Source: Heteronotia binoei
Lineage: Eukaryota
Length of the DNA stretch: 64,000 nucleotides
Assembly: GCF_032191835.1 (NCBI RefSeq)
Contig: NC_083233.1
Coordinates: 24,490,001 to 24,554,000, forward strand
Direction: 5' to 3'
Below are positions 374 to 62,638 of the stretch, piece after piece (within the stretch, counting starts at the first letter, position 1; every line of letters begins with the position of its first letter). The position numbers were made by a program, and so were the translations under genes. Below the pieces are notes generated by a model that made no database searches, was not told the DNA's origin, and saw only the letters and a program-made list of their open reading frames with translations.

Positions 374-11427
<11,054 letters not shown>

Positions 11428-22375: not shown

Positions 22376-26568
<4,193 letters not shown>

Positions 26569-36300: not shown

Positions 36301-39300
36301 TGCATGACTGCTGATACAATTTTTGATGAAGCATTTGGTGTGCCTGTAAGCCTTCCTATATTTGCAGTTATCTCTTTTGTATTTGTGGGGGGGTTCAGAT
36401 GCTTGTGTGCACGGTAGATGGTGAACTGTACCCCCCTTTGGAAGAGCCAGCTACAAGTACAGACCCCAGAGCCAACAAGAAGAAGGACAAGGATCGGGAG
36501 AAGAAGTTCATTTGGAACCATGGCAGTGAGTAGGGGGACTATCGCCCTCTTCCTCTTTTCCCATTCAGTCCTTTCCACTGATCCTGAAAAGACTTGGGGA
36601 ATGTTTAGCAAGGCTGCCTGCCCATGGAACCACCCACTCACCTCCATTCATTTCTGTGGCGAAGAACACTGGCCTTGTTCCACCTCTTCAGAGGGGGCCC
36701 ATGCCTGTTCTCGTCTGCCTTGCCCGGCTAGTGGGGCAGGAGAAGCAGGACAGTCTGTTTAGTTAGTCATGTGTCCTTCTCATCTCCCACTCTCCTTTTT
36801 GTTAACCACTTTGCTGCTGTGTTCCAGTCACTCTTCCATTGAAGAATGTGAGGAAGAGGCGATTCAGAAAGACAGCCAAGAAGAAGGTGAGTTGCATCGT
36901 TCCCCTACGTAGCGGGAGCTTTGTTGTCAAGATCAAAGGATCAGCATTGAGCTACAATCACACAAAACCTTGCCCCAGGGGAAAGAACAGGACAGTTCTC
37001 ACAGAATCTGTTTGTGCACAACAAACCTTAGAAACTCATTTGTTAAAGTGATGTTTGTTGCTCAGACATGCCAGAACTAAAACTGCCATTTGTTCAGAGA
37101 CCAGGGCGAAGGAGGAAAGACATTTTAAAAACCAGCCATAAATTCAACCCTGAACATTGTTCAGCTTTAGATGCGTCTCATACAGTGCAGTCCTATGCAG
37201 AGTTTGCTCTTCTAGGTGCATGGAAATCATTGAACTTAGACTGGGTTGACTTGGCATAGGATAGTTTCAGGTGGGTGGCCATGTTGGTCTGTTAACACTA
37301 AAAGGTAAATGTCATCCCCTGTGCAAGCACCAGTCGTTTCCGACTCTAGGGTGATGTCGTATCATGGCAGACTTTTTATAGGGTGGTTTGCCATTGCCTT
37401 CCCCAGTCATCTACACTTTCCCCGCCCCCAGCAAGCTGGGTACTCATTTTACCGACCTTGGAAGGATGGAAGGCTGAGTCAAGCTTGAGCCGGCTACCTG
37501 AACCCAGCTTCTGCCAGGATCAAACTCGGGTCATGAGCAGAGAACTTGGACTACAGTACTGCACTTTACCACTTAACACTAGGGGTGTGCAAAAATATTT
37601 AACTAGTATTTTTGTTTGGGTCTATTAGACACCCTCCCCCCCAAAATTGGGGGATTTTAGAAAAATTACAGATCTCAATATGGTATGGCATTTGGATCTG
37701 GGATTTTTTGGAAATCCCAAATTTTTTTCAGGTCCAATAGACCCAAGAAGAAAAATACTGGTTAAAAAAAAAAGTCAGCTGAGCTGGTGGGGAACAAGAG
37801 CCAGTTTGGTGTAGTGGTTAAGTGTGCGGACTCTTATCTGGGAGAACCGGGTTTGATTCCCCACTCCTCCACTTGCACCTGCTGGAATGGCCTTGGGTCA
37901 GCCATAGCTCTGCCAGAGGTTGTCCTTAAAAGGGCAGCTTCTGTGAGAGCCCTCTCCAGCCCCACCCACCTCACAGGGTGTCTGTTGTGGGGGAGGAAAG
38001 TAAAGGAGATTGTGAACCACTCTGAGTGGAGGGAGGGATATAAATCCAATATCTTCTTCTATGGGCACAGCTGATCCTGGCTGGGCTCGTTTCTCCTTCA
38101 GTCTGGTTTATACAAGGCTGCAGGAGAAGGGAGCCCCTGGAGCACATTGCTCCACGTGGCACAGAAGATCCTGGCTGGGCTTATAGGAGAAGCCAGCACA
38201 AAGCCCAGTCTGTGGGGAGGAACCTGTTTCTGTTGGCAGAGGACTGGCTTCTTCTGCACACTGGTGTAAACCAGGCTGCATGAGAAGACAGCCCCAAGCT
38301 GAGCTGTCAGGAACAGTCTGCTCCCCACTGGCACAGCTGATCCTCAGGCTGTCTTTTGCAGTCCCTTTAAACTTTAAAGGGACTGCAGTAGAAGCCTGAA
38401 AAACATCTGTTTTCTCTTACCTCTCTGTTGTTTTTGGATCTGCCTGGTAATCCCCAAATATATCCAGGGTTTTTTGAGGGGATTTCCCCCCTCCAAGAAA
38501 TCCCAAATTAATTTGAGATGCCGAAATATACCCAAATAATATAGGCAAGGTGTTTTTTAGTTAAATTTTCAGCTCAGGTAGAACTGCACACCCCTAATTA
38601 ACACCCTGAAGACCAACTAGATGTCCAGGTTGTAAACTTTTGAGAGTTGAAGCTCCCTTCCTCAGGTCAAGGTATTTAGTAGGGCTTTGGGGAGGAAGTT
38701 GAGACCTGTTTAGAATACTCAAGAGATCAAGGGGGCGGTAGTGAGTTTTATGAGAGCGCAACAACAATGTCTTTGGAAGCAAAGAGGTTGAAATGTTGCC
38801 AATGGTTTTTTTTTTGGTGGGGGGATGGTATAAAACATTTTTATACCACTTTTCCACCCAACTCAGGGTCCCCAAGGCAGCAAAGTATGTTTGAGGCATA
38901 GCCGGCAGCTAGTAGGGCTGTCTTTTTTTTTTGCTGAGTGTTAAATACCTGCCTTTTCTCTCTTTCCCCCTCTCTCTGGCCCAGTACATTGAGTCTCCTG
39001 ATGTGGAGAAGGAAGTGAAGCGCCTGCTGAGCACAGATGCTGAAGCTGTCAGTGTCCGTATCCTTTCATAACACCTAAAATGGGATTTGCCTTACATAGA
39101 CTGTTTTTACATTTCCTGAATGGTAAAACACACCACCTCCCTGCATGCACAGTCTGCAAACTGAACCACCCCGTTCTGCTTTGGGATTAAATAATAGAAA
39201 ACCCTCATATACACATAAAATACTCCCAGCAGTTTGTCATAAAACAGTTGCCTACCTTTCCACTGTCAAGGCAGTTTTTTAAATTCAGTGCTGGTGCAAA

Positions 39301-42300
39301 AATACTTACAAGGTTTAATACATTAAGACAATATATTCTGGTAATCATCAGTTTTGGCTGTGATTGGTAGGTAGAGAGGAAATGGGCAAGAGCATATTGG
39401 AACCCAGGTATTTAGGCATAGAGAAGAGAAATATTCCAGATGGAGCAAAAGATGTTATAGTTCCCACACCAAAACTCTTGACTTCTGAGCTTTCACTGGG
39501 CAGTTCTGCCATGCCTGTCATGGCAGAAGGAAGCCTAAATATCTCAAGAGTCCAGGTTCAGTTGAAGGAGGGTTTTTTTTTTTCATTCAGAGGCACAATG
39601 GTGGCCATGTTGATTTTTTTTCAAAGCATTCTGTTGGTAGGCTTGTGCTAGAAAGAGATTTGACAATGGGTCTGCTTAGCTTAGCACCTGAGTATCAGAT
39701 TCATTTATTGCGAGGGCCGAATCAGACATAGATGTCAATTTGCTGGGCCTAGCCATGTGTGCCATAAAACAATGCCAGGTGCTGGAGAAATGAACTTTAT
39801 ACAGGACACAGGCAAACCCCATTAACAATGCTATTTTTTACTCAAAATACCAACATGCTTATAACATTAACCCTTTTACAGTGCTTCTTTACAGTATCTC
39901 CTACTTCCACTGCCCATTATGCATTAGAACTGGGACAGTGTGCAATGACTTAATGCACAACCTCTGTTGAGAGCCAGTTTGGTGTAGCGGTTAAGTGTGT
40001 GGACTCTTATCTGGGAGAACCGGGTTTGATTCCCCACTCCACCACTTGCACCTGCTGGGATGGCCTTGAGTTAGTCATAGCTCTCGCAGACTTGTCCTTG
40101 AAAGGGCAGCTGCTGTGAGAGTCCTCTCAGCCCCACCCACCTCACAGGGTGTCATTGTGGGGGAGGAAGGTAAAGGAGATTGTGAGCCGCTCTGAGTCTC
40201 TAATTCAGAGAGAAGGGCGGGGTATAAATTTACAGTTTTCTTCTTCTAAAGGTAATGAATGACCGGTTGCTCACAGGCTGGGTAAGAGCCCTGGATGGGC
40301 CAGTTTCATCCCGTGGGCCTGGCTTAGCACAAGGGAGTATGAGAGAGGGTTTGATTGGGCCCCAGAAATACATTGAGAAGATTAGCACTGTAAAGTTGGT
40401 ACTAGGTAAGTACAGTTTCAGGTAAAAGGTACAGGAGCACGTAAGACTGTATTTGTCAGATATGGGCAGCAAAGTAAGAGTTAACTAGGCCAAAAAGAAA
40501 AGCTATGGCTGGAAGACGAGAACAGGTATAGACATTGATTTATGTGAGCAATTGGATTGTGGTTTCTCACTCGCCCAAGAATGTCACCCTAGAAACGTGA
40601 GTTCCCTTCTGGCTGATCTGGTTTTCCTTTGACTCTTCTGTGCCTGCTGTCAGGCTGGGAAATCATTGCAGAAGACGAAACAAAAGAAGCGGACCACCAT
40701 GGTTCACTCACAGGCTTGGATATTTCTTCCCCGGGGATGTCCAGCCACAAGCAGGGCCACGGCTCATCAGGTATGACAGCTTTCTTCCATCTAGTTGCCA
40801 AAGGCTGCAGTCCCTTGAAAGGTCACGTGCTACTTCTAGATGCTTTTGTAGAGATGGCTGAACTCAAACCATGTGCTCTGGGTGAAAATGCTGTCCATCT
40901 CTGCCATAGTTTGCCCTTAAGCCTATCTCTGATTTTATCCTAGCCATTCCCAAAGGGGTGTTGGGTGGCATAGCAAAGGTTTCCTCCCTTTTTTATCCTG
41001 TGAGATGGGTGGAGTCTGGTTGACATGAGAAAGCACAACTGTCCATTGCTCACCCAGCAAGCTTCGTAGGTGAGTGGGGATTTGAACCCTGGTCTCCCCA
41101 GCTCTACTCCAACTCGCCAGCCAACTTCTCTTAATACATCTGTAGTTCCTTTTGCCAAACTGACTCCTAAGTACAGGTTGGTTTACTCTTAGATCCCTGA
41201 AGCTGGACTGAAATTTCTGTAAGACCTTTTTAAGGAAGATGAGGCATCTAAAATGTGCAAGCAGAGGAGATGAAACTGCAGTGTTAGCAGCATTTCTCAG
41301 GCTGAAATTTATAGCTGCGTTAAAGATCTGTTAGCTGTCTCCGCCCACACCCTTTTTTCCCTTTGCTGCTTTAACCAAGTAGAACACGATGAACTCAGAG
41401 AGATATTTAATGACATCAGTAGCAGTAGTGAAGATGAAGATGAGAGGGATCACCATGACGATGAAGACCTAAACATCATGGATACGGAAGAAGACCTGGA
41501 GAGAAGGCTGCAAGGCAAGCTGAACGAATCAGATGGGCAGCAGCAAGAAAACGAAGGGGCCAACCAGATAGGTGAGCAGCCCGGGGTGGGGGCATTATGC
41601 TGGTGGATGATCTGAATCAGTGGCTTCTGCAAGGAAATGTAATGGAGTACATGGTCTGTTTCACTGGGGAATGCCAGCTTCTGTGTTCTGTCTTCCAGCC
41701 CTGGGGATCCAGAAGCAGATCGACAATCTGAAAGACAAGCTTCAAGAGACCCAGGAGCGCAGGAAGCGCCAAGAAGATCTCATTATGAGGGTAGAGAACC
41801 TGGCTCTCAAGGTGAGTCCAGTATCAGGATCCTTGTCCTTTATTCCGTTCATCTAAGACTGGGGAAGATTTATAACCTGGAGCATCCTAGTTAAGCAAGC
41901 ATATAGAGGTCCCATATAGCCAAAAAGCCCTACTTGAGCTGGGACTTTATAAAAAGGAGACATCTGATTCAGCAGGGGAAAAAAGATGTCCCAGATAGCC
42001 AGGAAGTCCTAAATGACTTGGGTTCACATCTTGTTTGTCATCAGGGAAATTCTGAAAGTGACTAAGCAATCAGTTTGTAAGGGGGACAAGGCAACACTTT
42101 GCTGTTTCACCTTACTCTCTGGCATGTTAGGAGTGTGGAAATCTGACGCCAGTATTACAGATCCAGTTATGCAAACTGCACGGCCTGTACTTCCTTCTCT
42201 CTCTGCTATTCAGTATTTCTAGATTAAAATGTTTCAGTTCCTAGCTTCATGAGTCACCCTGAGCACTGTGTTTATGGAAGGGTGGGATAGACACTTTCTG

Positions 42301-44023
42301 AATAAACAAACTGCCCTCTTTTGTGGTCTCTTGGAGTAGGGGTCAGCCCAAGCAGGAGACCCCGCTGTGCATTTTGTTCTCATTATCATCATCGTAGTGT
42401 TTTCAGATAGAGAATAGCAGCAACAATGGTCATGTTTTCTTATTTTTGCCAGACCCGTCTGCAAGCTGTGCTGGATGAGTTCAAACAGCAAGAAGAGCGT
42501 GAGAAGCAAGAGGTAAGCCATTCACATCTGCCGTGCTGTCGAGCAGAACAGGGGATGGACCAGTTTGGCAAACCAGCAGATAGCAACTTGCAAACTTGTC
42601 AGTGGTGTATCAAAATGTCCCAGCATATTTTGAGTATGAAAAGTTTGTCAGGGAAAGAATTTGCTGTGCTTGGTAATCTAGAGGACTAAGCATGGTCTTA
42701 ACAGCTGAGTTACCAGGAAATGCTATATACTGTAGCCTATAATCTCTTAAAGAGAACCAGCGTGGTTAAGAGCAGCAGACTCTAATCGGGTTTGATTCAC
42801 TCCTCCACATGCAGCCAGCTGGGTGATCTTGGGTCAGTCACAGTTCTCTCGGAGCTCTCTTAGCCTCACCTACCACACAGGGTGTCTGTTGTGGGGAGAT
42901 GAAGGGAAGGCGACTGTAAGCTACTCCAAGACTCCTTCAGGTAGTGAAAGGCAGGGTATAAAACCAACTCTTCTTCTTAAATGGAGATATTCTTGGATTC
43001 TCTTGTGGAGAACAGCATTTATTTCCTTTTGCATCTCTGATGTCTCCTTTTTTAGTCTCGCGGCATTCAATTATGGGAACTAGACATGGGCTCACACGAT
43101 CCCACCCTGCCTTCTCCTGCATTCCACTGCAGCTGTACTTTCTGATGTGCAGCAAAACATAGTCCGTCAGTGTCCAAACCACAAAGGAAAGGGGTTTTTT
43201 TCTTGCTTCCTGAGCTGGATTGCAGCTTGTTTTGGACCAGAAAGTCTTCTATAGCGAATGGCACATGGGAGTACGCAAACCCAAGGCCTTTCTGAAGTTC
43301 TTATAATGACTAACCCCAGCTTGTCATGATGTCTGAATGTGGCTTGTGTGTGAACCTTAAACTTCATTGGTTTCACTGCTCTACAGTGGAGCCTTTTGCC
43401 ATCCCTTTCATTCCATCTTGGCTTTCCCAGGCTTGGACAGTTTATGCCCTAAATGTAGGGTTTCCCCAGGGCACCCCTCTCTGTGTCCAACAGAGTGCTT
43501 CAGATTGGTTCTGACCCTTTACAGTACAGCCACAAGCAGTATTACCCCTTTCTGAGTCTGTTGACTTGGGGTGTCACTCTGCTTCAGACTGTCGGATTAA
43601 ATACCCCCTACGGCCCCGAAGGCGTACTGGTAATTGGGTTGTTTGACCTGTTAGATGACAGCTAGGACTGAAAGTCTACTCTTTTGTCTTTTGAGGGGCA
43701 AGACTGTGCTGGCAGTGGGAGGCTGAATATGGGGAGAAAGGAAGGGAAAGGAATGGGGGAATTTGGGGGAATTGCCACAGCTTCTCAGTGAATGAGGAGG
43801 AGGAGCAGTGAGAGGAGGTGGGGGGGATGCATGTCTCCCTTGGACTGAACAGTGATGGTGCTAAGGAGGGGCAGGTCTGTTTTGCGTGCAGCCAGAACAG
43901 CTTCTGGATCTTGAATATTAAGCACTGACAATACCATCCTTACCTCTCCCCCCCCCCATTTATTCTTTTTCTCTGCAGTTGGCCTCTCTTCAGGAGCAGC
44001 TGGAAGCCCTTATGGAGAAGTAA
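33367..44023 (+). CDS. TAF7: Transcription initiation factor TFIID subunit 7 (intron-containing TAF7/TAF7L-locus gene), 353 aa
   Basis: Exons 33367-33432, 33554-33632, 34518-34651, 36399-36525, 36828-36886, 38985-39057, 40654-40770, 41383-41571, 41699-41811, 42453-42512, 43979-44023(TAA); 1062 nt in frame. [35 protein letters not shown]...[44 protein letters not shown]...[11 protein letters not shown]. Position after TIMM8A matches human TAF7L. Confidence 0.96.
34760..36016 (+). mobile_element. 5'-truncated, frameshifted CR1 LINE (RT C-terminal half + 3' UTR)
   Basis: ORFs 34846-35436 ([32 protein letters not shown]) and 35562-35831; CR1 tail at 36001-36016. Confidence 0.95.
37301..37585 (-). 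mobile_element. Sauria-type SINE
   Basis: Homologous to 16243-16535. Confidence 0.85.
37798..38060 (+). mobile_element. tRNA-derived SINE
   Basis: gagccagtttggtgtagtggttaagtgtgcggactcttatctgggagaaccgggtttgattcccc... Confidence 0.9.
39058..40653 (+). other. U12-type (minor spliceosome) GT-AG intron of TAF7
   Basis: 5' splice site GTATCCTTT (39058-39066) is the U12 consensus. Branch-like TTTTCCTTTGAC at 40622-40633, about 20 nt before the AG at 40652-40653. Confidence 0.8.
39969..40247 (+). mobile_element. tRNA-derived SINE (inside the U12 intron)
   Basis: Full-length copy with a ttcttc tail. Confidence 0.9.
42752..42980 (+). mobile_element. tRNA-derived SINE (related subfamily)
   Basis: gggtttgattc B-box and shared cctcacagggtgtctgttgtgggg core. 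Confidence 0.75.
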
Positions 44024-48085: not shown

Positions 48086-48483
48086 GGGGTGGGTGAGCAA
48101 GTCAGCTCCAAGCTGGGACATTCCTGGAGATTTAGAGAGAAGGGACCTCATTGGGATATGATGCCATAAAGTCTACTTTCCAAAACAGCCATTTCCTCCA
48201 GGGGAACTGACCTCTGTAGCCTGGAGATCAGCTGTGATTCCAGCAGATGTCCAGGCCCCACTTGGAGGCTGGCAAGCCTAGCTACAACTCTTTTCCTTTG
48301 CAGCTCGTGCTGGGAATTTGTGCATAAAGGAATCTAGCAGAGTTCTCTTCTGAGCTCCAGCTGTGGCCTTCAGTCGGTACAGTCTGGGTAGGTCTGGCAT
48401 TTCCTCTATCAAAATCTAGGACGGGGATGTTTGCTGGCAACATCCAGAACGATGTTAGGATGGCACTCGTTTATTAGGTAGCT

Positions 48484-48523
48484 TAATCTACTTTCGGACA
48501 CTAAGCAGGAAAATCCTGGATTA
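48484..48523. promoter_or_regulatory. Cluster of CRX/OTX (K50 homeodomain)-type motifs upstream of the AIPL-like gene
   Basis: TAATCT 48484-48489, CTAAGC 48501-48506, GGATTA (=TAATCC) 48518-48523; 315-350 nt upstream of the ATG. Short motifs, chance occurrence possible. Confidence 0.4.
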
Positions 48524-48836
48524 ACCTGGTAGGGCAGGGAGAGGATCAGAAAGGCAGAGTAGAAACCATCAGAGAAGGTGTTGAGAGAGACACAGAGGTC
48601 ATCCTTTGCTTCAGGAAGAGGTTCCCGTAGAGTAGGGCTTGCTTCTACCTACGTAGTTGTGACCAACGAGAGCACATACGGCTGCATTTTGGGCTTGGAG
48701 CACCCAAAGTGGAATCCAGTCCTATCAAAACAGAGTGGGAGTGGTGGTGGGAGTTTTACCCTGAATACATTTGAAGGAGTAGGGAACCAACCATCTGTTA
48801 CTTGGAGAAGAAGGAGGATCTGCCGGCAATTCAGCC

Positions 48837-51800
48837 ATGGAGGAAACATACCTGCTTAATGTGGAAGGAGTCAAGAAAAAGATTTTACATGGAGGCTACG
48901 GGGAGCTGCCGGATTTCAAAGAGGGGAGCAAGGTAAACTTGCTAGCACTGAAGCAGTACACAGAATGTAGCATAGATCTACTGTGATGCATCTGTGTTAA
49001 GTAACAGTGGTCCCAGGTAATTCTTTCCTAGCATCCCCACTGAACACCAACCCAGGGTGCTGACTTTGTTTCCTTTTATCCTGTCTGCAGTCCCAGTGTT
49101 GTGTGACAGTTTTTTGGCTTTCCAAACTAAGCAAGCTCACTTTGGAAAAGCTAGCTGCCATCTTATTTCACCCGGGTTTTTATTTTTATTTCTAGCCTTT
49201 CTGTCAACATGGGCCTTGAAGGCAGTTTATAGTATTTTAAAAAGATTCAGGAAAATTCAATAACACCAACACAATACCTCAAATCCAGAAATGAACAGCA
49301 GTGTATATGCTGGTTTGCTTTATTTGCTACCAAAAGCTCTTGATAATGCCAGATGGTAACGTTGGCACCAGATGGATGTGTTTGGGGTAGTAGTTCCAAA
49401 GTTAGGGTGCCACCACAGAGAAGGTTCTGTCTCTGGTAGTCACCTACCTAACATCTGATGATACAGAACGAATAGACAGCTGGCTTGTTAGATTACATGG
49501 TCTAGATATCAGAGCAGTAGAGATTTATTCTTTGAGCTCCTGTCCCATCTGTCAGTGGCCCAGTGGTCCTGGACCTTGCCATTGGAAGAAAGAATAATTT
49601 CAAATAAACTTCCAATTATGAACTGCGAGCCAACTCTTTCCTGGGTACTAGACATGAAGGTTGGATGTTAAGCACAGTGAAAAGCCAGGACTTCCAGTTA
49701 TCAAGATCTGGACTACCTGGAGTCTAACACTTGTTAATTTTTGTCCATTTTGGATGCAGATCACTTTCCACTTCCAAACACTGAAGGACGACTTTGAGCG
49801 AACAGTCATAGACGACAGCCGCGAGTCTGGCCTGCCCATGGAGATCATTGTAGGAAAGATGTTCAAAATCGAGGTGTGGGAGATCCTGTTGACGTCCATG
49901 AGGATCGGCGAGGTGGCGGAGTTCTGGTGCGACCCAATTGTGAGTATGCTGCTATGCTAGAGCTGCCCTGCATCCTTTAGGTACAGGATAAGATTTCGAG
50001 AAGCTCAGCACTCTAACGGTGGTTGCAGCAAGGGGACTTAGGAAAAAAGGCTTGAACTTGAAGGGTCTGGGTCCAGATGTCTGCTTAGCATGCTGACCTG
50101 GATAGCCTAGGCAAGCCTGATCTTGGGAGCTAAACAGGGCCAGCCCAGCCTAGTTTTTGGATGGGAGATATCCAAGGAATACCAGGGATGTGACACAATG
50201 GCAGGCAATGGCAAGCCTCCTCTGATCATCCGTTTCCTTCAAGGCCCATTAGGGGTCACCAGAAATCAGCTTGACTTGATGGCAAAACTCCCCCACAAGT
50301 GTCTGCTTGGCCAGTTTGGTGTAGTGGTTAAGTGCATGTACTCTGATCTGGGAGAACCGAGTTCGATTCCCCACTCTACCACTTGCAGCTGCTGGAATGG
50401 CCTTGGGTCAGCAATCGCTCTCACTGAAAGGGAAGCTTCTGTGAGCGCTCTCTCAGCCCCACCTACCTCACAGGGTGTCTTTTGTGGGGTGGGGGAGATA
50501 AAGGAGATTGTAAGCTGCTCTGAGACGCCGAGATTCAGAGTGTAGGGCGGGGTATATATCCAATATCATCATCATCTTCTTCATAAAGTCTTGCTATAGG
50601 GCATTGAACAAATGGCCCACTCATAGCCTCAGGTTTTTTTGTTTGATATTGTGGCTGTATGGAAGAGAAAGGAAGGCTGTTGTTTACCTGGAGCCTGAGG
50701 AATGGAATTGGGCAGGCCGCACAAATTTGGCAGCTAGGTAACTCCAATCCTAAGAGTTCTTTCTTATGAGTAAGCCCCACAGAATTTACTTCTGAGCAGC
50801 CCTGCTCAGGATTCCTTCCTAAAAATGATACGCCATTTGTATGAATTTATTTATTACTTTAAATTTCTATCCCGCCCTCTCCGCAAGCAGACTCAGGGCG
50901 GCTAACAATCAGTTCTATAAAACAATTTAAAACATTTTGTGGTACTATACAATTTCAGTATGGCGGGATCTTTCGTTTTCTGTTTCTGTTCGCGATCCTA
51001 TAACTGAGCAATGCAGATAAACTACATTTGTTTATGCTTGGATAATACTCCCTCCTCTGCCAGTCATGTGATAGGGGGATAAAAAGTCCTTTATGGCACT
51101 GATGCTTTTGATTGTTAGAAATCCTCCTTCTCCCCAGCTTCTGAAATTTCAGCAGTTGTTTCCCACACCATTTTTTTCTACCTTCAGTCAGTCACATTTT
51201 ATTTGTATCCCGCCCTCCCCACCAAAGCGGCTCAGGGCGGCTAACGACAAGAACTTAATGCATACATTGCATAGCCTTAAGGGCTAGATACTTGGTTTAT
51301 TAAAACAAAATAAATCAAAGGTAAGGCTGAGATTCTTTGTATGCCAGTTTCTGCACCTAGGACTGTGCTATGGACTTATCTGAAATATTTCTGTCCTGCA
51401 CCCTCGGTTTATTGCTCCTGAGGCAGCTTTCAATCTCAGTTATTAAAGCAGATGCAATGGGACTATAGACTACAATAGCCCCACTTACAGAAAGAAAATA
51501 TGCTAATTTCCAAAGCAGGCTTTGATGACTTCTATGCTGCCATGTGGTTGCCACATTAAGTGGTTGTATAACAGTTACTTAATGCAAAATACCACTTGCT
51601 CAGGCCCCTACCCACCTACCTACCTGCTGCTTCTCTGCCTTATTCTCTTGGTATGTGTATGGCTATATTTGGATATCTGGATATTTGGGTTAATCTGGAT
51701 AAAGTGTTCTCTGTTTCCAAAGGCTTCTACTGGACATCAGAGGTAGGCAGGGCAGGATTAACATAAAATCCAGTTGAGGAAAGAAAGGCAGACAGTTAAG

Positions 51801-54800
51801 CTGCAGCCAACATAGCAGAGATTTACTAGACTGTGGGCAAAATGGACAGGATTTATGCATTTATTTATGTATTTAGATAGTTCGTAATAAACCAATATAC
51901 AGGATATGGAATATTAAGATCTATACCATGACGGATCCCTAAAACAAAGCATGACATGCGTGCACACACACAAATCTTTTATGTAGTCTTTTGCAAAAGC
52001 ATGTTCAACTTGTTTTTTGGTTAAATTTCTAGATAGATAGATAGAATTCTTGGCTACATCTTCAAAAATGCAAGATCTGAAATGAAATTGAATAGATAAT
52101 GTTTGCTATTGGTGTGGTGACCATGCCACAGTGCCTGCAACACGGTGTAGAGTTATTTTACATACTTTCAATGTACTTTCAGTGTACTCCGCAACTGGAT
52201 TTTACTATGCAAAATGACAAAATCCACTTGCAAATAGTTGCTGGAGTGGCTTGAAACTGCATTATTTAGCATTCGTGAAAGCATATCTTAATAAAACAGT
52301 GGGGTGAATTCTTGGCTATATCTTCTCCAAAAATGCAACATCTGAAATGAAATTGAATGCCTGGGTCACCACCATCTAAAACAGCAGAGGGCATCGGTTG
52401 TTGACAGGATTGGGACCATGCTGATAGGAAATTTTGTAAGAACTATTACATAGGGATGCCATGAATTTTGTAGCAAATGTGTTTGACAGTCGGATTTCCT
52501 GTGTTCCACTGTGGTGATCCTATGTTAGCCAGTTCTTGCCACTGAATGACTTGAAATTTTCCCAAACCGGTTTGTATGTTTTTCTTCTCAAAGCTTCACA
52601 TGTGCGAAAGATGCTGTCCATCAAAGAGATGAGCAGCCATTAACATAGCTAAGGACTGACTGATTTATCTGTGTCTATTTCAGCAATGGTTGGCTGAACG
52701 GAGCAGCAGTGTAGTAAGGGCACGCAAGCGTGCCTGAAAAGCTGATCAAGAACTTTCATGCTGTTAGAAAGGAAGAGAGTGAAGTCACCTGGCAAACAGC
52801 CACAAACAGGCTGACAAATGAACAGTCCACTGAGAAACAAACTGTAAGATTTTGCAGTTACTCAGAAATACACAGAAAATCTCTTTGGGGTCTAGCAGCA
52901 ATTTTTCTCCAGGGCAGTTTGCCAGGGATCCTGGAGAGGGGTTTTTTTTGCCATCTTTTTGCCATTTGTGTGTGTGTGTGTGTGTGGAGAGGTATTTGTG
53001 AATTTCCTACATTGTGCAGGGGGTTGGACTAGATGACCCTTGAGATCCCCTCCAACTGTAGGATTCTCCTTTAGTTAACAGAGTAACTTGACTCAGCCCT
53101 GATCTGGATAGCCCAGGCTAGCCCAGTCTCATCAGACCTCAGAATCTAAGCAGGATTGGCCCTAGTTAATATTTATATAGGAAGGAAGTAGAAGTAAGTA
53201 GTTTACTTAGCCATGAATAAAAAGCAAGTACTTCTTCACCCAAAGAATGATTAACACTTGGAATTCACTGCCACAGGAGGTGGCGGCAGCTGCAAGTATA
53301 GACAGCTTCAAGAGGGGAATGGGTAAACATATGGAGCACAGGTCCATCAGTAGCTATTGGCCACAGCGTATTGTTGGAACTCTCTGTCTGGGACAGTGAT
53401 GTTCTGTATTCTTGGTGCTTGCGGAGGGGGGGCACAGTGTGAGGGCTTCTAGTGTCCTGGTCCCACTAATGGACCTCCTGATAGCAGCTGGGGGTTTTTG
53501 GCCACTGTGTGACACAGATTGTTGGACTGGATGTGCCATTGGCTGCCCCTGTACCGAACTCGGAAACTGCAGCTAGTGCAGAATGCAGCAGCCAGACTGT
53601 TAATGGGACTACCTCGGTGGGAACATGTACGGCCTAGGCTGCGAGAACTGCACTGGCTGCCAATTGTGTACCGAGTCCATTACAAGGTGCTGGTTATTAC
53701 CTTTAAAGCCCTATATGGCCGAGGACCTGTTTACCTTAGGGACTGTCTCTCTCCATATGTTCCCCAGAGAGCACTGAGATCTAGTTCACAAAATCTTCTG
53801 AAAATCCCTGGGCCAAAGGAGGCTAAGTTAAAAACAACTAGGGAGCAGGCCTTCTCAATAATGGCACCCCAATGGTGGAACCAGCTGCCAGAAGAGGTGT
53901 GGGCCCTGTGGGACTTTAACCAGTTCTGTAGGGCTTGTAAAACTGCCCTCTTTCAACTAGCCTTTTAAGTTGAATTTAGCAGTAACATCAAGCCATCTTT
54001 ATATATACTGAGTCCATAGCACCGTTACGTTTTACTGGATTTTAGACTATTTATGTAATTTAATTAATATATGAACAGTTTTATATTGTTACTGTTTTGA
54101 TTTTATTGTTGTTGTATCATGGTATGTGCCATGTCCTGTAAGCTGCCCTGAGCCTGCCTTGGCGGGGAGGGCGGGGTATAAATAAAAATTTGTTATTATT
54201 ATTATTATTATTATCCAACATGGCTTCTCTTATGTTCTTATATTCTAGTGGACTGGAACTACTCCAGGTTCTAGTTATCCTGGAAACTAATATAAACATG
54301 AAACAGACTGCTGAACATCACACAGGCTGTCTTTTTCGACAAACAAGCTATCAGCCAACATGACAGATGTTCAAGCGCCCTCCTATTAAATAGCACCCAA
54401 TAGACTTTATTAAATGTAATCATGCAATGTGAAGGGGTTGATTTAATCAGTCTGAATCAGGGCATCTTTTAGTCTGGTTTTGACTGTCTTTTGTCTTTCA
54501 AAATAATAGACTTCAGTCTTAAAAAGCCAGGAGACTCTCCTTGATAGATCAGGGATCGGTAAGCAGTCATGACTGAGTCTTAACAGTTGTTTCCTTTTCC
54601 CTCCAGCACACCGGCATGTACGCCTTGATTTCCAAAAGCATGAGGAAAATTGTTGAAGGCAAGGACCCTCTGGAGGGGCAGAAGCATCGCTGTGGGATGG
54701 GCAACATGTTTGATTATCACAGCACAGGCTACACAGATCTGGATGAGTTGCAGAGGACGCCCCAGCCCCTCATCTTCATCATGGAGCTTTTCAAAGTGAG

Positions 54801-57800
54801 CAATAGATTCAGAGAGAAGACAAAGGCTGTTGCAGTCTACCATCTTTCCATGGGATTTTACACAATCTATTCCCAGTGTGATAGATCACGGGTGGCCAAA
54901 CTTGCTTAATGTAAGAGCCACATAGAATAAATGTCAGATGAGCCACAAGACATGAATGTCAGATGTTTGAGAGCCACAGGGGAAGGAAGGAAGGAAAATA
55001 GATGGGGAGGGAGAGGTGGAAAGAAAGCAACTTTAACTTTAAATGCATTCTCCAAGTTGCAGGCTGGCTTGGCTTGGATATAGATCTAAAGAGAAAAATG
55101 GCTTCTCCAAGATGGCCAAGAGGCCAGTGGAAGCTTTGAGAGCCACACAATATGTGTGAAAGAGCCACATGTAGCTTCCGAGACACAGTTTAGCCACCCC
55201 TGTGATAGATCAAGTTGGGTAGCTGTGTTAGTCTGTCTGTAGCAGCAGAAAACAGCAGGAGTCCAGGAGCACTTTAAAGCCTAACAAAATCTGTGGCAGG
55301 CTATGAGCTTTTGTGAGTCACTGCTCACTTCTTCGTATACAGCTAGAATTCATGGTCTGCACTTTGGGTAGGAAGGGACATAATCTGAATACCAGGAATG
55401 GCTCAAGTTTTGGGTTGCTCTGGAGAGTATGTCCTTCAGTGTCCCGCCCCTGCCCATGCTAGTGTCTTGGTGCTCATGAACAGATAAACCCATCTTGGAG
55501 GAGACACAATTCTTTCATACTTCTACAGATCTTGTTAATAACAACAAAGCTAAAAGAAAGGCATATTTTCTACACACAGGATGATCTGGGGCGTGGGGTG
55601 ACCGCAGAGATGATGAATTACCATTTCCTGTCCTATTCAGGTAGAAGACCCTTCTGCTTACAAACGGGACACGTGGGCCATGAACACAGAAGAGAAGCTG
55701 GTGGCTGTACCGAAGTTACACACCGAGGGAAACCGGTTGGTCCTGTCCCGGAAGTTCAAGGAGGCAGCAGAGAAGTACCAGGAAGCTGTCATCTGCTTGC
55801 GCAACATTCAGGCTAAGGTGAGAATTAATTGGCGATTCTGAGTTTTTGAATTGATGCTCTGGGATCTTCTTAATGGCGGCCACATTGAAGAATAGCAGAG
55901 CCATTGTTTCAGGCCACTTCTCTTGAATCCAGCTCTCCATTGAATCCAGGTGTCCCATATCCATATCCATATGATACAGTTCCACCTCCCAGGGCGATAT
56001 GGATTTTCCCTGTGAATGGACAAGCTACCATCTAGGAACCTATGTGAAGCTGTTTTGAGTTCTTCCCATGAAAGGTTAGTTATAAATAAATTATGAGTGG
56101 GCCAAAGGTAGATAGAGATCCACCAATAGATCATTGGCCAGTTTTTGGTGAATCACTTGGTTGCTAGGCGCCAGAACCCCATGCACTAGGCCTGGTCATA
56201 ATGCTATATCATCTTAATCTAGTATTCCATCTCTGAGCCTATTGCTGTACTGATATATAGAATGCGCCCAATGGAAACCGTCACCTGTGATATAGATGCT
56301 ATTTGTTTTATTGTATTTTATGGTTTTAGCTTGTAGTTTTAAATATTTTAACTTTTGTTGTTCTCTGCCATGAGCCCACTTGCAGGAAAGTGCGGAATAC
56401 AAATTAAAACACATAAATAAGAGTGCATGCATGGAATTGCAGCCTAGATTAGTTATGCCTTAGCTGTCAAGTTGGCTTACAATTTTATGAATCTTTTTAT
56501 GAATCTTTAGCTGGGAGTAAGCCCTACTAAGCACAGTGTAATATGCTTCCATCTGACTAAATACAAAACCCATTAGTGGGTGATGGGGAGTCTACTCAAA
56601 ACAAAAATACACCATGATATAAGACTGACATCAGTCAACCTAATCAGTCAGGTTTTCTTATCTACCATCCCTAATCTTTCCCAGGGCTTTTTTTTTTTGG
56701 GGGGGGGGGGGTTAGAAAAAGCCCAGCAGGGACTCATGTGCATATCAGGCCACATCCCCTGATGCCGAGCCAGCCGGAACTGTGTTCCTGTGCGTTCCTG
56801 CTCAGAAAAAGCCCTGATATTTCCAACTCCAAGTCTCCAACCCAGGCCATTCTATCACTCTAAAATCTTCTTCAGCGCAGGGAATCTATAGTTTTTCACA
56901 TTAACTGGACAAGCTGCCTCTTCAGCCCAGCTATAACAAACTGTCTTACTGTCTTGGGCTAAGGAACAGATTTCATTAGCTGAGCTTTTCAAGAGGAAGA
57001 CGGAAGTATAAATGTAGTGAATATAATGGAAGTAGGATGATAAAGAGTAGGTTTCTTCTTTGCTGCTGGTCGTCCCATAGCCATTTTGCTTTTTTTGGTG
57101 ACCCAGCCTCCCGTTAACCATTAATCCAGGCCATCTTTCCTTGGTCTCTTGACAGGAGAAGCCATGGGAAGAAGAATGGCTACACCTGGAGGAACTCATC
57201 ACCCCTCTTGTGCTGAACTATTGCCAATGCCAACTGGAGCTGGGAGAATATTATGAGGTTTTGGAGCACACTACTGATCTTCTCCAGAAGGACAACGGTA
57301 AGCTGCCTCTCCTGACAGCTGCTTACAGGTCACCCCAAAACTAGACCCAGACTTCTCCCCCCCCCCTTCAACGTTCATAGTCTTTTGAATGGCTAGCAAG
57401 TCATCCCCTCCGAAAATTGTTGAGAATTGGTACTTCTGATTATTTATGTATTATTTATTACGTTAGATGTATATCCGGCCCATTCTACGAAGACTCAAGG
57501 CAACTAACAACATTACAGTGATTGGATCTATTTTTATGGTTTTATCTAATGTGATTCCGGAAGGGAGTCAGGAATTTGAGGTGAAAGAACTGATGTGCTG
57601 AATAGCAGCAGTTCTCTCCCGAACGGGGACACAGAGTCATCAGCATTGCTACTGCAAATGCCAGGAGATTCTGAAGGCAGTGCCTGGGGAGGATGGCGCT
57701 GGGGGGGTGATGTCACTTCAGAGTTTTGCCCAAAAACTAGAACGTCAGTGGTGTGATGATATCACTTTGGATGTCAGCTCCTGGGAAGGTCTGAAGATCC

Positions 57801-60489
57801 CCCTACTGGGAAGCAGGCAGGACCTAGCAACCCTAAATCTGTTGAAGCTCCTGCATTCCTCAACATTTCTCCTTAGGCAGCTACCCATCAGGAATAATTT
57901 TTTGTAAAAACCCTGGAAAACCATCAGAAGCAAAAGCTTCAAACCAAAACCAATAATTTGGGCAATTTAAAAACCAGCAGCAGTCTATTGAAAAGTGCAA
58001 TGCAAAACAGAGCAGAGAGTATTCAAATGATGATAACCAAAAGGCTGCCAAATAAAATAAGACCTTCTCCTGGCAACTGAAGGTCAACAAGTGTGGTGCC
58101 AAGAGGAATGGCTGGGGAGTTTTGCAGTCAAGGGGCCACCAAAGAAAGGACCCCGGTTCCAAAACTTGCCTGCTTTACTTTGGAACATGAGACTAAATGG
58201 ACCTGATATTAATGAAGCTGATCTTAACCGACAGGCAGGCTCAGAAGGGAATAAGTCATCATTCAAATGACGTGGTCCCACATTATTCAGTTGCAAATAG
58301 CACAAACTTTACAAAGGCACTGTAAGTCTCTAGTATTCTCTAATGCGTATTACTGAATCTGACAGTGCCACAACTAGAATTTCTAACTGCTCAGGGTGAT
58401 GGATATAACAAATCTACGAGTTCAGTCTTAATAAATAGTTTTTAACGTGTGAGCAATAGACCAATGCCAAATTAGTAGCATTGTGCCTGTTAGACCAAAG
58501 AAATGATTTTGTATCCTTAGACCCCGAGATTTGGCTTAAAATTCAGGCTACAAATCCTAACTGAGCTATGAATGCCATCAGCTTTGTTGAGGCCAGCTAA
58601 AAGTTTGAACTCTCAGATCCCCTTATCTGAAAAAGTAAAAAGGTCCTCTGACAAGAGAGCGTGTGAGAAAATGATTTGTCTTTATTCTCATTTTAGAAAA
58701 CGTCAAGGCGTATTTCAAACGGGCAAAGGCCCATGCTGCTGTCTGGAATGAAAAGGAGGCACGAACTGACTTCATGAGGGTGACCCAGCTTGACCCCTCA
58801 TTGGCTGCCGCCGTGAGGAAAGAGATGAAGCTCTTGGGGGAGAGGATGAGGAAGAAATATGTGGAAGAGCGCAAGAAATACCAGGGCATCTTCGACCACC
58901 ATCTAGCAAAAGATGGGACTGAAGAGCGAGCTGGGGAGGGGACAAAAGGGCTTGCTAAGGGACAAGAGGAGGTGCAGCACAATAGGCTCAAGGCACAGAT
59001 GGAAGAAAATGGGCCAGAAGCCCTGGAAGAAAGTAGAGCAGAAGCCCTGTGGTCTGAGAGAGAGGCAAAATGGCCAGGAGTGGGTGAGAAGGATGGAGAA
59101 ATAGAGCAAGGAAATTGGGACAAGGAAGACCAAGGAGGACTCCTAAGAAAGGAGAGGGCAATGGACAAGAAGCAGGAAGAGATGATGGTGGCTGAAACTG
59201 GAGATGAAATGCAAGAAAGCCAAGCTCAACAAAAGGACCGCAGCTTTTTCTGGGAAGAGAGGGCAAGTTGGGAAACCTCTATGTCCAACCAACAGTTGGG
59301 GTTTGGGGAATGGAAACCAAAGGAAGAGCAAGAAAAGGCAGAAGAGACAATGACTTTGGGGACACCAGAACAAAATGGAGCACTAGGCTTTGCAACAGTA
59401 AAAGGAGAGCGAAGAAAACTCATTCGGAGATATTCTGGGGAGGACGTGGAGGAAGCTGCGGGAGATTTCTGGTCCATCACAGAGGACATGTTTAACCAAG
59501 AGTGCTGCGAGGCAGAGAGGAGCTTCCTGGGAGCAGAGAGGGAAGAAGATGAAGCAAGGAATGGAGAAACCCAAGCTAGAGATTCTTCTCGACCTCAGGA
59601 AGAGACAGGCTGGGCAGAGGACTTCACGGAATGGGCAAGAGAGGAGAGTTCTGAGGAACTCTTCGAAGAGGATTTCTTCCAGGCCCCTCAAGGAGAGCCA
59701 GAGAGAGGAGAAAGGATGACGACAGAACTGAGTCCAAGGGAAGAGTCCTCCCCAGAATGGTGGGATTGTGCGGGGCTAAGGGAGGAGACTTCCACCGCTG
59801 AGAAGGAAGAACGCAAAGCAGAAATGGAATGGCAAGGAAAAGAAATACAAACTGCTGTTTGTTCCAGGCCAGTGCAGGAGTCACATGGATACGCAAACAG
59901 CTGCTGCAAGGAGTACCACGAAGCAGAGACAGACCTCAAAGAGATAGTTACAGGAGCCGAAAACTGTAGGGAAGGAATACAAGACGAGAGCTCCAACAGA
60001 GAGATAATCTTTGAAGGAAAGTTTTCATGGGAACAGAGAGATGAGCGCATAGAAGAAATTACTAGCTGTGTGCAGGAAAAGACCAAAGTTGAGTCGAGCT
60101 CTAGGGCTCAGGAAGAGAGCTGGGAGTATGAAGTAGGCCTAGAATGTCTGGAGGATGAGCTGTGCTTTAGGATTGAGAAATTCAAGGTAGGAATGGGTGA
60201 AGGGAATTCTGACAGAGATCAAGGCAAGGAGGATTTCCTCTGGGAATGGCCAGAGAACACAGGAGAGATGACTCACCTGAGCATGAAGGAAGAACCTCTC
60301 TCTCCCTGGAGTGGTGGAGATACACCAAAAGTCGAAGGTGGAGGCCCACACGTTACAAGAGGTAAAGACACAAGCCAAGCTTGCTGCACAGTGCAGATGG
60401 CTGAGCCTGGAGTGAAAAGCGTGCCCAACGTTTGGGGTACAAAACAGCCCAGCCCAGTAGAGGAGGAAGCCCAGGGAAACAGGAAGTGA
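48837..60489 (+). CDS. AIPL1-like (AIP-family FKBP-like + TPR co-chaperone) with long acidic C-terminal extension, 858 aa
   Basis: Exons 48837-48932, 49760-49939, 54607-54795, 55641-55817, 57156-57297, 58697-60489(TGA): 96/180/189/177/142/1793 nt, 2577 nt in frame. The first five sizes equal the human AIPL1 boundaries (c.96/276/465/642/784). Peptides [63 protein letters not shown] keep W72, C89, C239 and W278 equivalents in register. Confidence 0.93.
50310..50583 (+). mobile_element. tRNA-derived SINE
   Basis: Same family as 37798. Confidence 0.85.
53215..54240 (+). mobile_element. CR1 3' fragment split by an inserted L2 3' fragment (about 53546-54212)
   Basis: CR1 UTR runs to ...ccattggc at 53546. 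Then L2 peptide [20 protein letters not shown]...LHWLP...KTALFQLAF and a (TTA)n tail. CR1 resumes as tccaacatggcttctcttatgttctta at 54214-54240. Confidence 0.88.
54887..55202 (-). mobile_element. hAT-type MITE (CAGGGGTGGCCAAAC family)
   Basis: Exact TSD TGATAGAT (54879-54886, 55203-55210). Confidence 0.88.
56682..56816 (-). mobile_element. hAT-type MITE (CAGGGCTTTTT family)
   Basis: TIRs present; flanks ATCTTTCC / ATATTTCC. Confidence 0.8.
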
Positions 60490-62173: not shown

Positions 62174-62638
62174 CAGGGCCAGCTCTTCTACTAGGCAAAC
62201 TAGGCATTTGCCTAGGATGCCGGCCCTGGAGGGGTGCCAAATTAGGCACCCCCCTTTGTTTCTAAAAAATCCTTCCCCTCCCTCCCCGAATCGCTAGTCT
62301 TCCTCTTTCCCGCCGCTTTCCCCTGCGCCCCGAATCGCTAGTTTTTCCCCTTGCCGTCGCTTTTCCCCACCTCCTCCTCCTCCCTCCCTGAATCGCTAAT
62401 CTTCCCCTTTGCTGCTGCTTTTCCCTGCCTCCTTTCCCTCCCTCCCCGAATCGCTAGTCTTCCCCTTTTCCCCACCTCCTTCCCCTTCTTCCCCAAATCG
62501 CTAGTCTTCCCCTTTGCTGCCGCTTCTTCCTGCCTCCTTCCCCTATAGATAGGGGTATGAAGGGGCAGCAGGGAGAGTGGAGGGCACGGTGGGGGGGTGG
62601 GATGCACAGCAAGGCTGCCTGGGGTGCTGCTGGCCCTG
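62174..62638 (+). mobile_element. Probable hAT-type MITE containing a pyrimidine-rich minisatellite
   Basis: TIRs cagggccagc / gctggccctg; five copies of (c)cgaatcgctagtcttcc between 62286 and about 62515; TSD poorly conserved. Confidence 0.6.

What the first reader, a model, noticed from the sequence alone, without database searches (positions are those of the whole stretch)
48837..58902. A third AIP/AIPL1 paralogue in the Xq22-homologous block, absent from the human locus
Seen: exon sizes are identical to human AIPL1 and the W72/C89/C239/W278 equivalents are kept, but the neighbours are TAF7, TIMM8A and BTK. Established: human AIPL1 is at 17p13 and AIP at 11q13; human Xq22.1 has no such gene between TAF7L and DRP2; an 11q13/17p13/Xq paralogon is known (ARRB1/ARRB2/ARR3). 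Inference: this is a genome-duplication ohnologue lost in mammals. It may be orthologous to the cone-expressed zebrafish aipl1b/aipl2 (recalled, not verified). A cone-type PDE6C chaperone would matter in geckos, whose photoreceptors are cone-derived.
Basis: partly seen in the sequence, partly recalled or inferred. Interest (0 to 1): 0.7.

Follow-up and report, generated by a model that had tools for sequence, protein, structure and literature searches.

The report
Gecko AIPL2, a known lost-in-therians chaperone gene
This is an intact gecko copy of AIPL2 (zebrafish aipl1b), the sister gene of the blindness gene AIPL1; placental and marsupial mammals have lost it, and the gene, its position and its loss were already published in 2022-2023.

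Summary
A six-exon gene on the + strand (48837-60489) encodes an FKBP-TPR co-chaperone that aligns without gaps to AIPL1 and AIP. Its exon junctions match human AIPL1. It lies downstream of BTK, TIMM8A, a NIPA-like gene and TAF7. The window is Heteronotia binoei, where NCBI calls the gene "AIPL1, partial".

- **Tree.** A maximum-likelihood tree gives three clades at 100% bootstrap: AIP, AIPL-1 and AIPL-2. The gecko gene is in AIPL-2.
- **Translocation rejected.** The AU test gives p = 0.00025.
- **Both genes in one species.** Platypus, paddlefish, bichir/reedfish, eel and tarpon each carry both genes.
- **Conserved neighbours.** TAF7-AIPL2-DRP2 recurs in platypus, turkey, another gecko and paddlefish.
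- **Zebrafish link.** The Danio protein beside taf7 is AIPL-2, matching cone and pineal aipl1b.

It is not new. Bhalla & van Noort (bioRxiv 2022; J Mol Evol 2023) described AIPL-2 as an ohnologue "gone missing" between BTK and DRP2.

Corrections:
- 58902 is not a stop. The frame runs on through a 530-residue Glu-rich tail.
- No sauropsid AIPL-1 was found, so this is probably the gecko's only AIPL gene.
- Platypus keeps both genes, and a salamander keeps AIPL-2.
- The four cited residues are also kept in AIP.

Expression could not be tested. The scan has not reported this gene on other DNA.

The parts
48483..48524 (+). Pair of CRX/OTX-like YTAATCY motifs 354 and 319 bases upstream of the ATG; putative photoreceptor/pineal promoter element (inferred)
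   Evidence: One search gives both sites; the window background is 1 site per 2 kb. One search finds comparable pairs within 350 bases of the ATG in Paroedura, turkey, Danio aesculapii and paddlefish, and one site in platypus. The region from -695 to +96 is 80% identical to Paroedura.
48837..48932 (+). AIPL2 exon 1 (96 nt, start codon, residues 1-32)
   Evidence: GT donor; identical to P0003.
49760..49939 (+). AIPL2 exon 2 (180 nt, FKBP-type domain)
   Evidence: PF23322 PPIase_AIP E 3.9e-11 and FKBP_C E 1e-5. AG/GT splice sites.
54607..54795 (+). AIPL2 exon 3 (189 nt, FKBP insert region)
   Evidence: (PPIase_AIP E 9e-5).
55641..55817 (+). AIPL2 exon 4 (177 nt, linker and TPR1)
57156..57297 (+). 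AIPL2 exon 5 (142 nt, TPR2)
58697..58902 (+). AIPL2 exon 6, conserved part (TPR3 and the C-terminal helix, up to about residue 330)
   Evidence: gapless alignment to AIPL1 8EOA and AIP 7ZUB; dN/dS 0.11 against Paroedura.
58903..60489 (+). AIPL2 exon 6, continuation: Glu-rich acidic tail of about 530 residues and the stop codon (60487-60489)
   Evidence: single open frame, 20% Glu, net charge -65; aligns along its whole length to Paroedura P0006; dN/dS 0.39 (0.29-0.53).
33370..44023 (+). TAF7 (multi-exon), upstream neighbour
   Evidence: co-linear tblastx matches to the paddlefish TAFII55_N gene.
22376..26556 (-). NIPA-like Mg transporter gene (3' exons)
   Evidence: PF05653 E 1.8e-60; exon match to the paddlefish NIPA gene, which sits in the same place.
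16711..16947 (+). Open stretch holding the last TIMM8A coding exon
   Evidence: zf-Tim10_DDP E 2.2e-13.
5233..5427 (+). BTK kinase-domain exon (a further one lies near 9044-9163)
   Evidence: PK_Tyr; best PDB matches are all BTK.

Best explanation
The locus is the intact Heteronotia binoei orthologue of AIPL2. Other names for this gene are zebrafish aipl1b, UniProt 'AIP like 2', and the gene NCBI calls 'AIPL1' in birds and reptiles.

AIPL2 is the sister of AIPL1. The two arose by duplication before the crown of jawed vertebrates, and AIPL2 has stayed in the NIPA-TAF7-AIPL2-DRP2 block that corresponds to human Xq22. Therian mammals and frogs lack it. Birds and reptiles appear to lack AIPL1 instead, so AIPL2 is probably the gecko's only AIPL gene.

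**Shown:** gene structure, orthology, synteny, an intact frame, and purifying selection on both core and tail.

**Inferred mechanism:** like AIPL1 and zebrafish Aipl1b, the protein works in photoreceptors and pineal cells as an HSP90 co-chaperone.
- Its TPR domain would dock on the HSP90 C-terminal MEEVD. The equivalents of K265, R270, C239 and W278 are kept.
- Its FKBP-type domain keeps a hydrophobic prenyl pocket.
- Together these would mature and stabilise PDE6 catalytic subunits. In geckos that would be the cone-type PDE6C. A retinal guanylate cyclase may also be a client, as reported in zebrafish.

The 530-residue Glu-rich tail is translated and under constraint. Its role is unknown.
For: **Identity and model.**

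**Domains.** Gapless alignment to AIPL1 (8EOA, 457 bits) and to AIP (7ZUB, 410 bits).

**Tree.** AIPL-2 clade at 100/99 support, with the window nested among geckos inside squamates. The PMSF quick tree gives the same three clades. The AU test rejects a translocated AIPL1.

**Synteny.**
- Platypus: TAF7|AIPL2|DRP2.
- Paroedura and turkey: the same order.
- Paddlefish: NIPA|TAF7|AIPL2|DRP2.
- Danio aesculapii: TAF7|AIPL2.
- Window: TAF7 and NIPA.

**Residues.** Pocket and HSP90-contact residues are kept or replaced conservatively (residue list from PMC12733016).

**Selection.** dN/dS is 0.11 in the core part of exon 6 and 0.39 in the tail.

**Function of the orthologue.** Zebrafish aipl1b is expressed in retina and pineal, and it is needed for Pde6c and Gc3 stability (PMC5381001).

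**Promoter.** Paired CRX/OTX-like motifs recur upstream in the orthologues.

**Literature.** The same evolutionary reading is published in 10.1101/2022.07.13.499904 and PMC12733016.
Against: - No RNA run was listed for this species, so expression in retina or pineal, splicing, and use of the long tail are untested here.
- The absence of AIPL-1 from this gecko is inferred from annotated protein sets of other sauropsids. The H. binoei assembly itself was not scanned.
- No + strand AATAAA lies within 3.5 kb after the stop, so the 3' end of the transcript is undefined.
- The conserved residues are family-wide, so they do not prove PDE6 specificity.
- The promoter motif evidence is suggestive only.
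Confidence: 0.85

Rival explanations
1. Simple translocation: the gene is the true orthologue of mammalian AIPL1, moved from the PITPNM3/PIMREG neighbourhood to the BTK-DRP2 block in the sauropsid lineage.
For: NCBI names the bird and reptile genes 'AIPL1'. No other AIPL1-like protein is seen in sauropsids. The exon structure equals that of human AIPL1.
Against: - Separate AIPL-1 and AIPL-2 clades at 100% bootstrap; AU p = 0.00025.
- Platypus, paddlefish, bichir/reedfish, eel and tarpon have both genes.
- Platypus AIPL-1 lies beside RCS1/PIMREG, while its AIPL-2 lies between TAF7 and DRP2.
- The TAF7-AIPL2-DRP2 order is shared with paddlefish.
Confidence: 0.02
2. The gene is AIPL2, but in geckos it is a decaying or silent relic, or the long tail is untranslated sequence that happens to stay open.
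For: No expression data. NCBI annotates the H. binoei protein as partial, 433 aa. The tail DNA is purine-rich, which lowers the stop-codon frequency.
Against: - All six exons are intact with GT-AG introns.
- The core is 94% identical to Paroedura, with dN/dS 0.11.
- The tail has dN/dS 0.39 with upper bound 0.53, and it aligns end to end with the 855-aa Paroedura protein, including the last residues before the stop.
- The other + frames in the tail stretch hold only short ORFs.
- It is probably the only AIPL gene in an animal with working eyes.
Confidence: 0.03
3. The gene is an expressed AIPL2 whose main client or role differs from PDE6 maturation. For example, it could chaperone retinal guanylate cyclase or other prenylated proteins, or the tail could drive a scaffolding role.
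For: - The C-terminal helix region resembles AIP as much as AIPL1.
- Zebrafish aipl1b loss also lowers Gc3.
- The long acidic tail is absent from AIPL1.
- Fish AIPL-2 carries a second TPR domain, which shows that the C-terminal architecture has changed.
Against: Zebrafish Aipl1b loss removes Pde6c protein. With AIPL-1 apparently missing from sauropsids, some AIPL must serve PDE6, and this is the only candidate. Pocket and HSP90-contact residues are kept.
Confidence: 0.1

Closest known systems
Zebrafish Aipl1b (gold rush/gosh gene; AIPL-2 clade; UniProt 'AIP like 2')
   Same: Same orthology group: the Danio aesculapii protein P0411 falls in the AIPL-2 clade and lies beside taf7. Same FKBP-TPR core. 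Both have a C-terminal extension unrelated to the primate proline-rich domain.
   Different: The fish extension holds a second TPR domain, partial in Danio and complete in paddlefish, sturgeon, bichir, eel and medaka. The gecko tail has no trace of it and is a 530-residue Glu-rich stretch. The cores are 64% identical. In zebrafish the gene shares the work with rod aipl1a. In the gecko it is probably alone.
Mammalian AIPL1 (LCA4 gene; PDB 8EOA, 5U9A, 6PX0)
   Same: Same domain order and length with co-linear numbering. Identical exon junctions for exons 1-5. Prenyl-pocket and HSP90-contact residues are kept.
   Different: A different clade, AIPL-1. A different locus, PIMREG-linked in platypus. 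Only 59% identity to mouse. No Glu-rich tail; primates have a short proline-rich one.
AIP (AH receptor-interacting protein; PDB 7ZUB, 8H77)
   Same: The same family, with a gapless alignment offset by one residue. The last TPR and the C-terminal helix region are very similar.
   Different: It is the outgroup to both AIPL clades, at 52-54% identity. It is ubiquitous and serves AHR and other clients (literature). It has no tail.

Membership tests
AIP/AIPL FKBP-TPR co-chaperone family | N-terminal FKBP-type domain of the AIP kind, with the insert region (Pfam PF23322) | tested here: met
   exon 2 E 3.9e-11, exon 3 E 9e-5. PF23322 is precomputed on P0003.
AIP/AIPL FKBP-TPR co-chaperone family | C-terminal three-TPR domain plus terminal helix, co-linear with solved AIPL1 and AIP | tested here: met
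   gapless over residues 2-324 to 8EOA_C and 7-329 to 7ZUB_C.
AIP/AIPL FKBP-TPR co-chaperone family | Residues whose mutation impairs HSP90 binding in AIPL1 (A197, W222, C239, E245, K265, R270, W278, L293) | tested here: met
   all are identical in the gecko protein. Positions come from PMC12733016. This is a sequence-level test only; no binding was tested.
AIPL-2 orthology group (aipl1b/aipl2) | Falls in the AIPL-2 clade, separate from AIPL-1 and AIP | tested here: met
   clade support 100/99. SH-aLRT 98 under PMSF. AU test rejects union with mammalian AIPL-1.
AIPL-2 orthology group (aipl1b/aipl2) | Position between TAF7 and DRP2 in the BTK block | tested here: met
   TAF7 lies directly upstream in the window, and BTK, TIMM8A and NIPA lie further upstream. 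DRP2 lies beyond the window's end, but it follows the gene in Paroedura, turkey, platypus and paddlefish.
AIPL-2 orthology group (aipl1b/aipl2) | Acidic C-terminal extension beyond residue ~330 | tested here: met
   530 residues, 20% Glu. Tetrapod orthologues have tails of 147-589 residues with 17-24% Glu.
AIPL-2 orthology group (aipl1b/aipl2) | Expression in cones and pineal; needed for PDE6C stability | not testable with these tools
   No RNA run was listed. There is only indirect support from paired CRX/OTX-like motifs and the zebrafish data.
AIPL1 proper (AIPL-1 clade) | Groups with mammalian, amphibian and fish AIPL1 | tested here: not met
AIPL1 proper (AIPL-1 clade) | Linkage to PIMREG/PITPNM3/WSCD1 | tested here: not met
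   The window neighbours are BTK, TIMM8A, NIPA and TAF7. Platypus AIPL-1 lies beside an RCS1/PIMREG gene on another chromosome.

The most novel reading that the evidence does not exclude
In birds and reptiles AIPL2 is the only AIPL gene and serves every photoreceptor type. Its long Glu-rich tail is kept compositionally from salamander to birds and is under purifying selection in geckos. On this reading the tail is a required functional module, for example an internal competitor or tether for the HSP90 acidic C-terminus or for the PDE6 gamma subunit. It would have replaced the second TPR domain that ray-finned fish AIPL2 carries at the same place. Neither module has been described or tested.
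Probability: 0.2. Interest if true: 0.5.

Novelty: already known. Interest (0 to 1): 0.22.

Why it matters
AIPL1 is a human blindness gene and a gene-therapy target. Knowing that vertebrates began with a rod-leaning and a cone-leaning AIPL helps explain why human cones depend on AIPL1, and which animal models are apt. That point is already in the literature.

What this window adds is modest:
- A clean, complete gecko gene model. The public H. binoei annotation is partial.
- Evidence that platypus keeps both genes and that a salamander keeps AIPL2. These refine where the published paper placed the losses.
- Support for the claim that sauropsids lack AIPL1.
- Two undescribed C-terminal architectures: a tandem TPR domain in ray-finned fishes and a constrained acidic tail in tetrapods.

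Tried and rejected
- **RNA evidence.** The look-up of sequencing runs for 54550-60500 listed no run. Expression, splicing and the transcript's 3' end stay untested.
- **TAF7 by Pfam.** Single TAF7 exon ORFs gave no Pfam hit. TAF7 was confirmed instead by tblastx against the paddlefish gene.
- **Scan notebook.** Word searches for AIPL1, PITPNM3, WSCD1 and PIMREG found nothing in this genome. A second AIPL gene in H. binoei could not be checked directly.
- **Synteny look-ups that failed or said little.** Polypterus P0004 and Pleurodeles P0489 were not on record. Zebrafish P0401 (AIPL-1) showed only an uninformative CD225 neighbour.
- **DRP2 in the window.** tblastx found none. The window ends 3.5 kb after the stop.
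- **Relic of the fish second TPR domain.** A profile search found none in any tetrapod tail.
- **Poly(A) signal.** No + strand AATAAA follows the stop.
- **Literature on gecko or chicken AIPL expression.** Nothing useful.
- **A eutherian AIPL2.** The 'panda' protein P0030 nests inside squamates beside a rattlesnake. It is better read as contamination or mislabelling.
- **Joined spliced model.** Public searches used exon references or database protein P0003, which is identical to the first 433 residues. The joined translation was built only inside local scripts, from window.fa.


Full report
**1. What is in the sequence**

The + strand between 48837 and 60489 carries a six-exon gene.
- The exons are 48837-48932, 49760-49939, 54607-54795, 55641-55817, 57156-57297 and 58697-60489.
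- Their lengths are 96, 180, 189, 177, 142 and 1793 nt.
- Every intron is GT-AG. The joined frame has a single stop at its end and gives 858 residues.

The first 433 residues are identical to database protein P0003, [quoted passage not shown]. The window is therefore from Bynoe's gecko, and the public annotation of this gene is incomplete.

Pfam finds the AIP-type FKBP domain in exons 2 and 3, and weak TPR matches in exons 4 and 6. Residues 2-324 align without a gap to AIPL1 in PDB 8EOA (457 bits). Residues 7-329 align without a gap to AIP in 7ZUB (410 bits).

**2.

- **Exon sizes.** Human variant names in review PMC12733016 (c.276+1, c.277-2, c.465+1, c.466-1, c.642, c.643-2, c.784, c.785-10, and "in-frame exon 2 skipping") fix the human junctions at the same codon positions as the gecko. 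The claim holds for exons 1-5.
- **Residues.** W72, C89, C239 and W278 are present. They are also present in AIP of a wallaby and an eel, and in a mollusc AIP. They show membership of the family, not of AIPL1.
- **Neighbours.** These are confirmed:
  - a BTK kinase exon at 5233-5427;
  - the TIMM8A zinc-finger exon in 16711-16947;
  - TAF7 exons co-linear with the paddlefish gene over 33370-44023.
- **An extra neighbour.** A NIPA-like gene lies on the - strand at 22376-26556.
- **End coordinate.** 58902 is not a stop. The codons there read His-His-Leu-Ala, and the frame runs on for about 530 more codons. The scan noted that tail as a separate finding (s1-322585).

**3. Which gene it is**

A word search with the conserved start of exon 6 found tail-bearing relatives:
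- in squamates, turtles, crocodilians and birds, where NCBI mostly names them AIPL1;
- in platypus;
- in ray-finned fishes.

An exhaustive search with P0003:1-330 gave representatives of the whole family. Cluster look-ups supplied names. A search with tenrec AIPL1 supplied AIPL1 proper from sharks to mammals.

A careful maximum-likelihood tree of 49 proteins, rooted on invertebrate AIP, gives three vertebrate clades. AIP, AIPL-1 and AIPL-2 each have 100% bootstrap. The window nests among geckos inside squamates in AIPL-2. A site-heterogeneous quick tree of a different sample gives the same clades.

The AU test rejects it at p = 0.00025.

Five lineages carry both genes: platypus, paddlefish, bichir/reedfish, eel and tarpon. 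Shark, ray and chimaera sequences lie inside AIPL-1. The split therefore predates crown jawed vertebrates, as expected for a 2R ohnologue pair.

**4. Synteny**

| Species | Order found |
|---|---|
| Platypus (AIPL-2, P0118) | TAF7 gene, AIPL2, DRP2-type gene |
| Platypus (AIPL-1, P0304) | other chromosome, beside an RCS1/PIMREG gene |
| Paroedura | TAF7-AIPL2-DRP2 |
| Turkey | TAF7-AIPL2-DRP2 |
| Paddlefish | NIPA(-)-TAF7-AIPL2-DRP2(-) |
| Danio aesculapii (P0411, 497 aa) | directly after taf7, near 43 Mb of a 57-Mb chromosome |

The paddlefish order matches the window gene for gene. P0411 falls in AIPL-2. Iribarne et al. mapped the cone and pineal gene aipl1b to 41.7-42.9 Mb of zebrafish chromosome 14, and rod-leaning aipl1a to chromosome 15 (PMC5381001). 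UniProt already names many fish members "AIP like 2".

**5. It is already published**

Bhalla & van Noort (bioRxiv 10.1101/2022.07.13.499904; cited as J Mol Evol 2023, 91:628) describe the following:
- AIP, AIPL-1 and AIPL-2 as 2R ohnologues;
- AIPL-2 placed on the paralogon homologous to human X;
- birds and reptiles said to have only AIPL-2.

A 2025 review repeats this and equates aipl1b with AIPL-2 (PMC12733016).

**6. Where my results differ from, or add to, the paper**

- **(a) Platypus.** The paper places platypus only in AIPL-2. I find both genes, at the two expected loci. The AIPL-2 loss is therefore therian.
- **(b) Salamander.** The Pleurodeles waltl protein P0489 falls in AIPL-2 as sister to amniote AIPL-2. 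The amphibian loss is not general. Its locus could not be read.
- **(c) Sauropsids.** Among the 120 best relatives of tenrec AIPL1, spanning 88% to 61% identity, there are mammals, frogs, a caecilian, coelacanth, lungfish, sharks and many ray-finned fishes, but no bird, turtle, crocodilian or squamate. This supports loss of AIPL-1 in sauropsids. I could not scan the H. binoei assembly itself.
- **(d) The 'panda' protein.** P0030 (UniRef A0A7N5JWL6) nests inside squamates beside a rattlesnake. It is no evidence for a eutherian AIPL2.

**7. The C-terminal extension**

The gecko tail has these properties:
- It has 20% Glu and a net charge of -65.
- It aligns end to end with the 855-residue Paroedura protein.
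- Its dN/dS is 0.39 (bootstrap 0.29-0.53), against 0.11 for the conserved part of the same exon. It is translated and constrained, though loosely.
- Its sequence similarity fades outside squamates.

All tetrapod tails examined (147-589 residues) have 17-24% Glu.

Ray-finned fish AIPL-2 instead carries a second TPR domain after the first. In paddlefish it is 53% identical to the gecko TPR, and in Danio it is partial. A profile of that domain finds nothing in any tetrapod tail. The zebrafish gosh stop at Gln413 lies about where that second domain starts in the Danio aesculapii protein. I did not find either architecture described in the papers read.

**8. How it most likely works**

*Shown here:*
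- an intact gene under purifying selection;
- the residues lining the AIPL1 prenyl pocket are kept or conservatively changed;
- the residues whose mutation impairs HSP90 binding are kept (residue list).

*Inferred:*
- The protein acts as an HSP90 co-chaperone in photoreceptors and pineal cells.
- It matures PDE6 catalytic subunits and perhaps a retinal guanylate cyclase, as zebrafish Aipl1b does for Pde6c and Gc3.

*Indirect support for photoreceptor expression:*
- A pair of CRX/OTX-like YTAATCY motifs lies at -354 and -319 (48483-48524).
- Similar pairs lie within 350 bases of the ATG in Paroedura, turkey, Danio aesculapii and paddlefish, and one site lies there in platypus.
- The window background is one site per 2 kb.

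No RNA run was listed, so expression is untested.

**9. Procedure notes**

- The joined spliced model was sent to no search tool. Searches used exon references or the database protein P0003. The joined translation was used only in local scripts.
- No reads were laid, no human contig was fetched, and the window contains no N.

**10. Verdict**

The finding is already known. Interest is low to modest. The residual value lies in the complete gene model, the refinements for platypus, salamander and sauropsids, and the undescribed C-terminal modules.

Noticed in passing
P0001, P0002, P0004, P0005, P0007, P0417 (residues ~380-590); P0411 residues 413-491: Ray-finned fish AIPL-2 proteins carry a second TPR domain after the first: 38-55% identical to the gecko TPR where the copy is complete, and 44% over the partial Danio copy. 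Tetrapod tails show no trace of it. The zebrafish gosh stop at Gln413 would fall about where the second domain starts.
   Followed up: partly
window 58903-60486: The Glu-rich tail is under purifying selection between two geckos (dN/dS 0.39). Its composition (17-24% Glu), but not its sequence, is shared by salamander, platypus, turtle, crocodilian and bird orthologues. The scan noted it separately (s1-322585).
   Followed up: partly
P0030 (UniRef100_A0A7N5JWL6, labelled Ailuropoda melanoleuca): A 'giant panda' AIPL2-like protein nests inside squamates beside Crotalus (88% identity). It is probably contamination or mislabelling in that proteome, not a eutherian AIPL2.
   Followed up: partly
L003 (platypus CM014216.1) and L001 (platypus CM014205.1): Platypus keeps both AIPL-1 (beside RCS1/PIMREG) and AIPL-2 (between TAF7 and DRP2). 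The published phylogeny places platypus only in AIPL-2.
   Followed up: yes
P0489 (Pleurodeles waltl): A salamander protein falls in the AIPL-2 clade as sister to amniote AIPL-2. The reported loss 'in amphibians' therefore seems limited to frogs; caecilians are open. Its locus could not be fetched.
   Followed up: partly
window 22376-26556 (-): A NIPA-family Mg transporter gene lies between TIMM8A and TAF7, and the same gene sits in the same place in paddlefish (L005:1-646). From memory, unchecked: the human Xq22 block has no such gene. The scan noted it separately (s1-322659).
   Followed up: partly
window 33370-44023 (+): TAF7 at this X-homologous locus is multi-exon, as it is in platypus, turkey, Paroedura, paddlefish and Danio. 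From memory, unchecked: human X-linked TAF7L is multi-exon and autosomal TAF7 is intronless. If so, the X-linked gene would occupy the ancestral locus.
   Followed up: no
window 6846-7184, 25874-26203, 50123-50545 (+): Three copies of an interspersed repeat give near-identical ORF translations, one of them in AIPL2 intron 2. LINE-like fragments lie at 34846-35436 (reverse-transcriptase motif, in a TAF7 intron) and at 53519-53968 (in AIPL2 intron 2).
   Followed up: no
window 60490-64000 (+): No AATAAA on the + strand within 3.5 kb after the AIPL2 stop, so the transcript's 3' end is undefined. AATAAA is about twice as frequent in the whole window as in shuffles (89 against 43).
   Followed up: no
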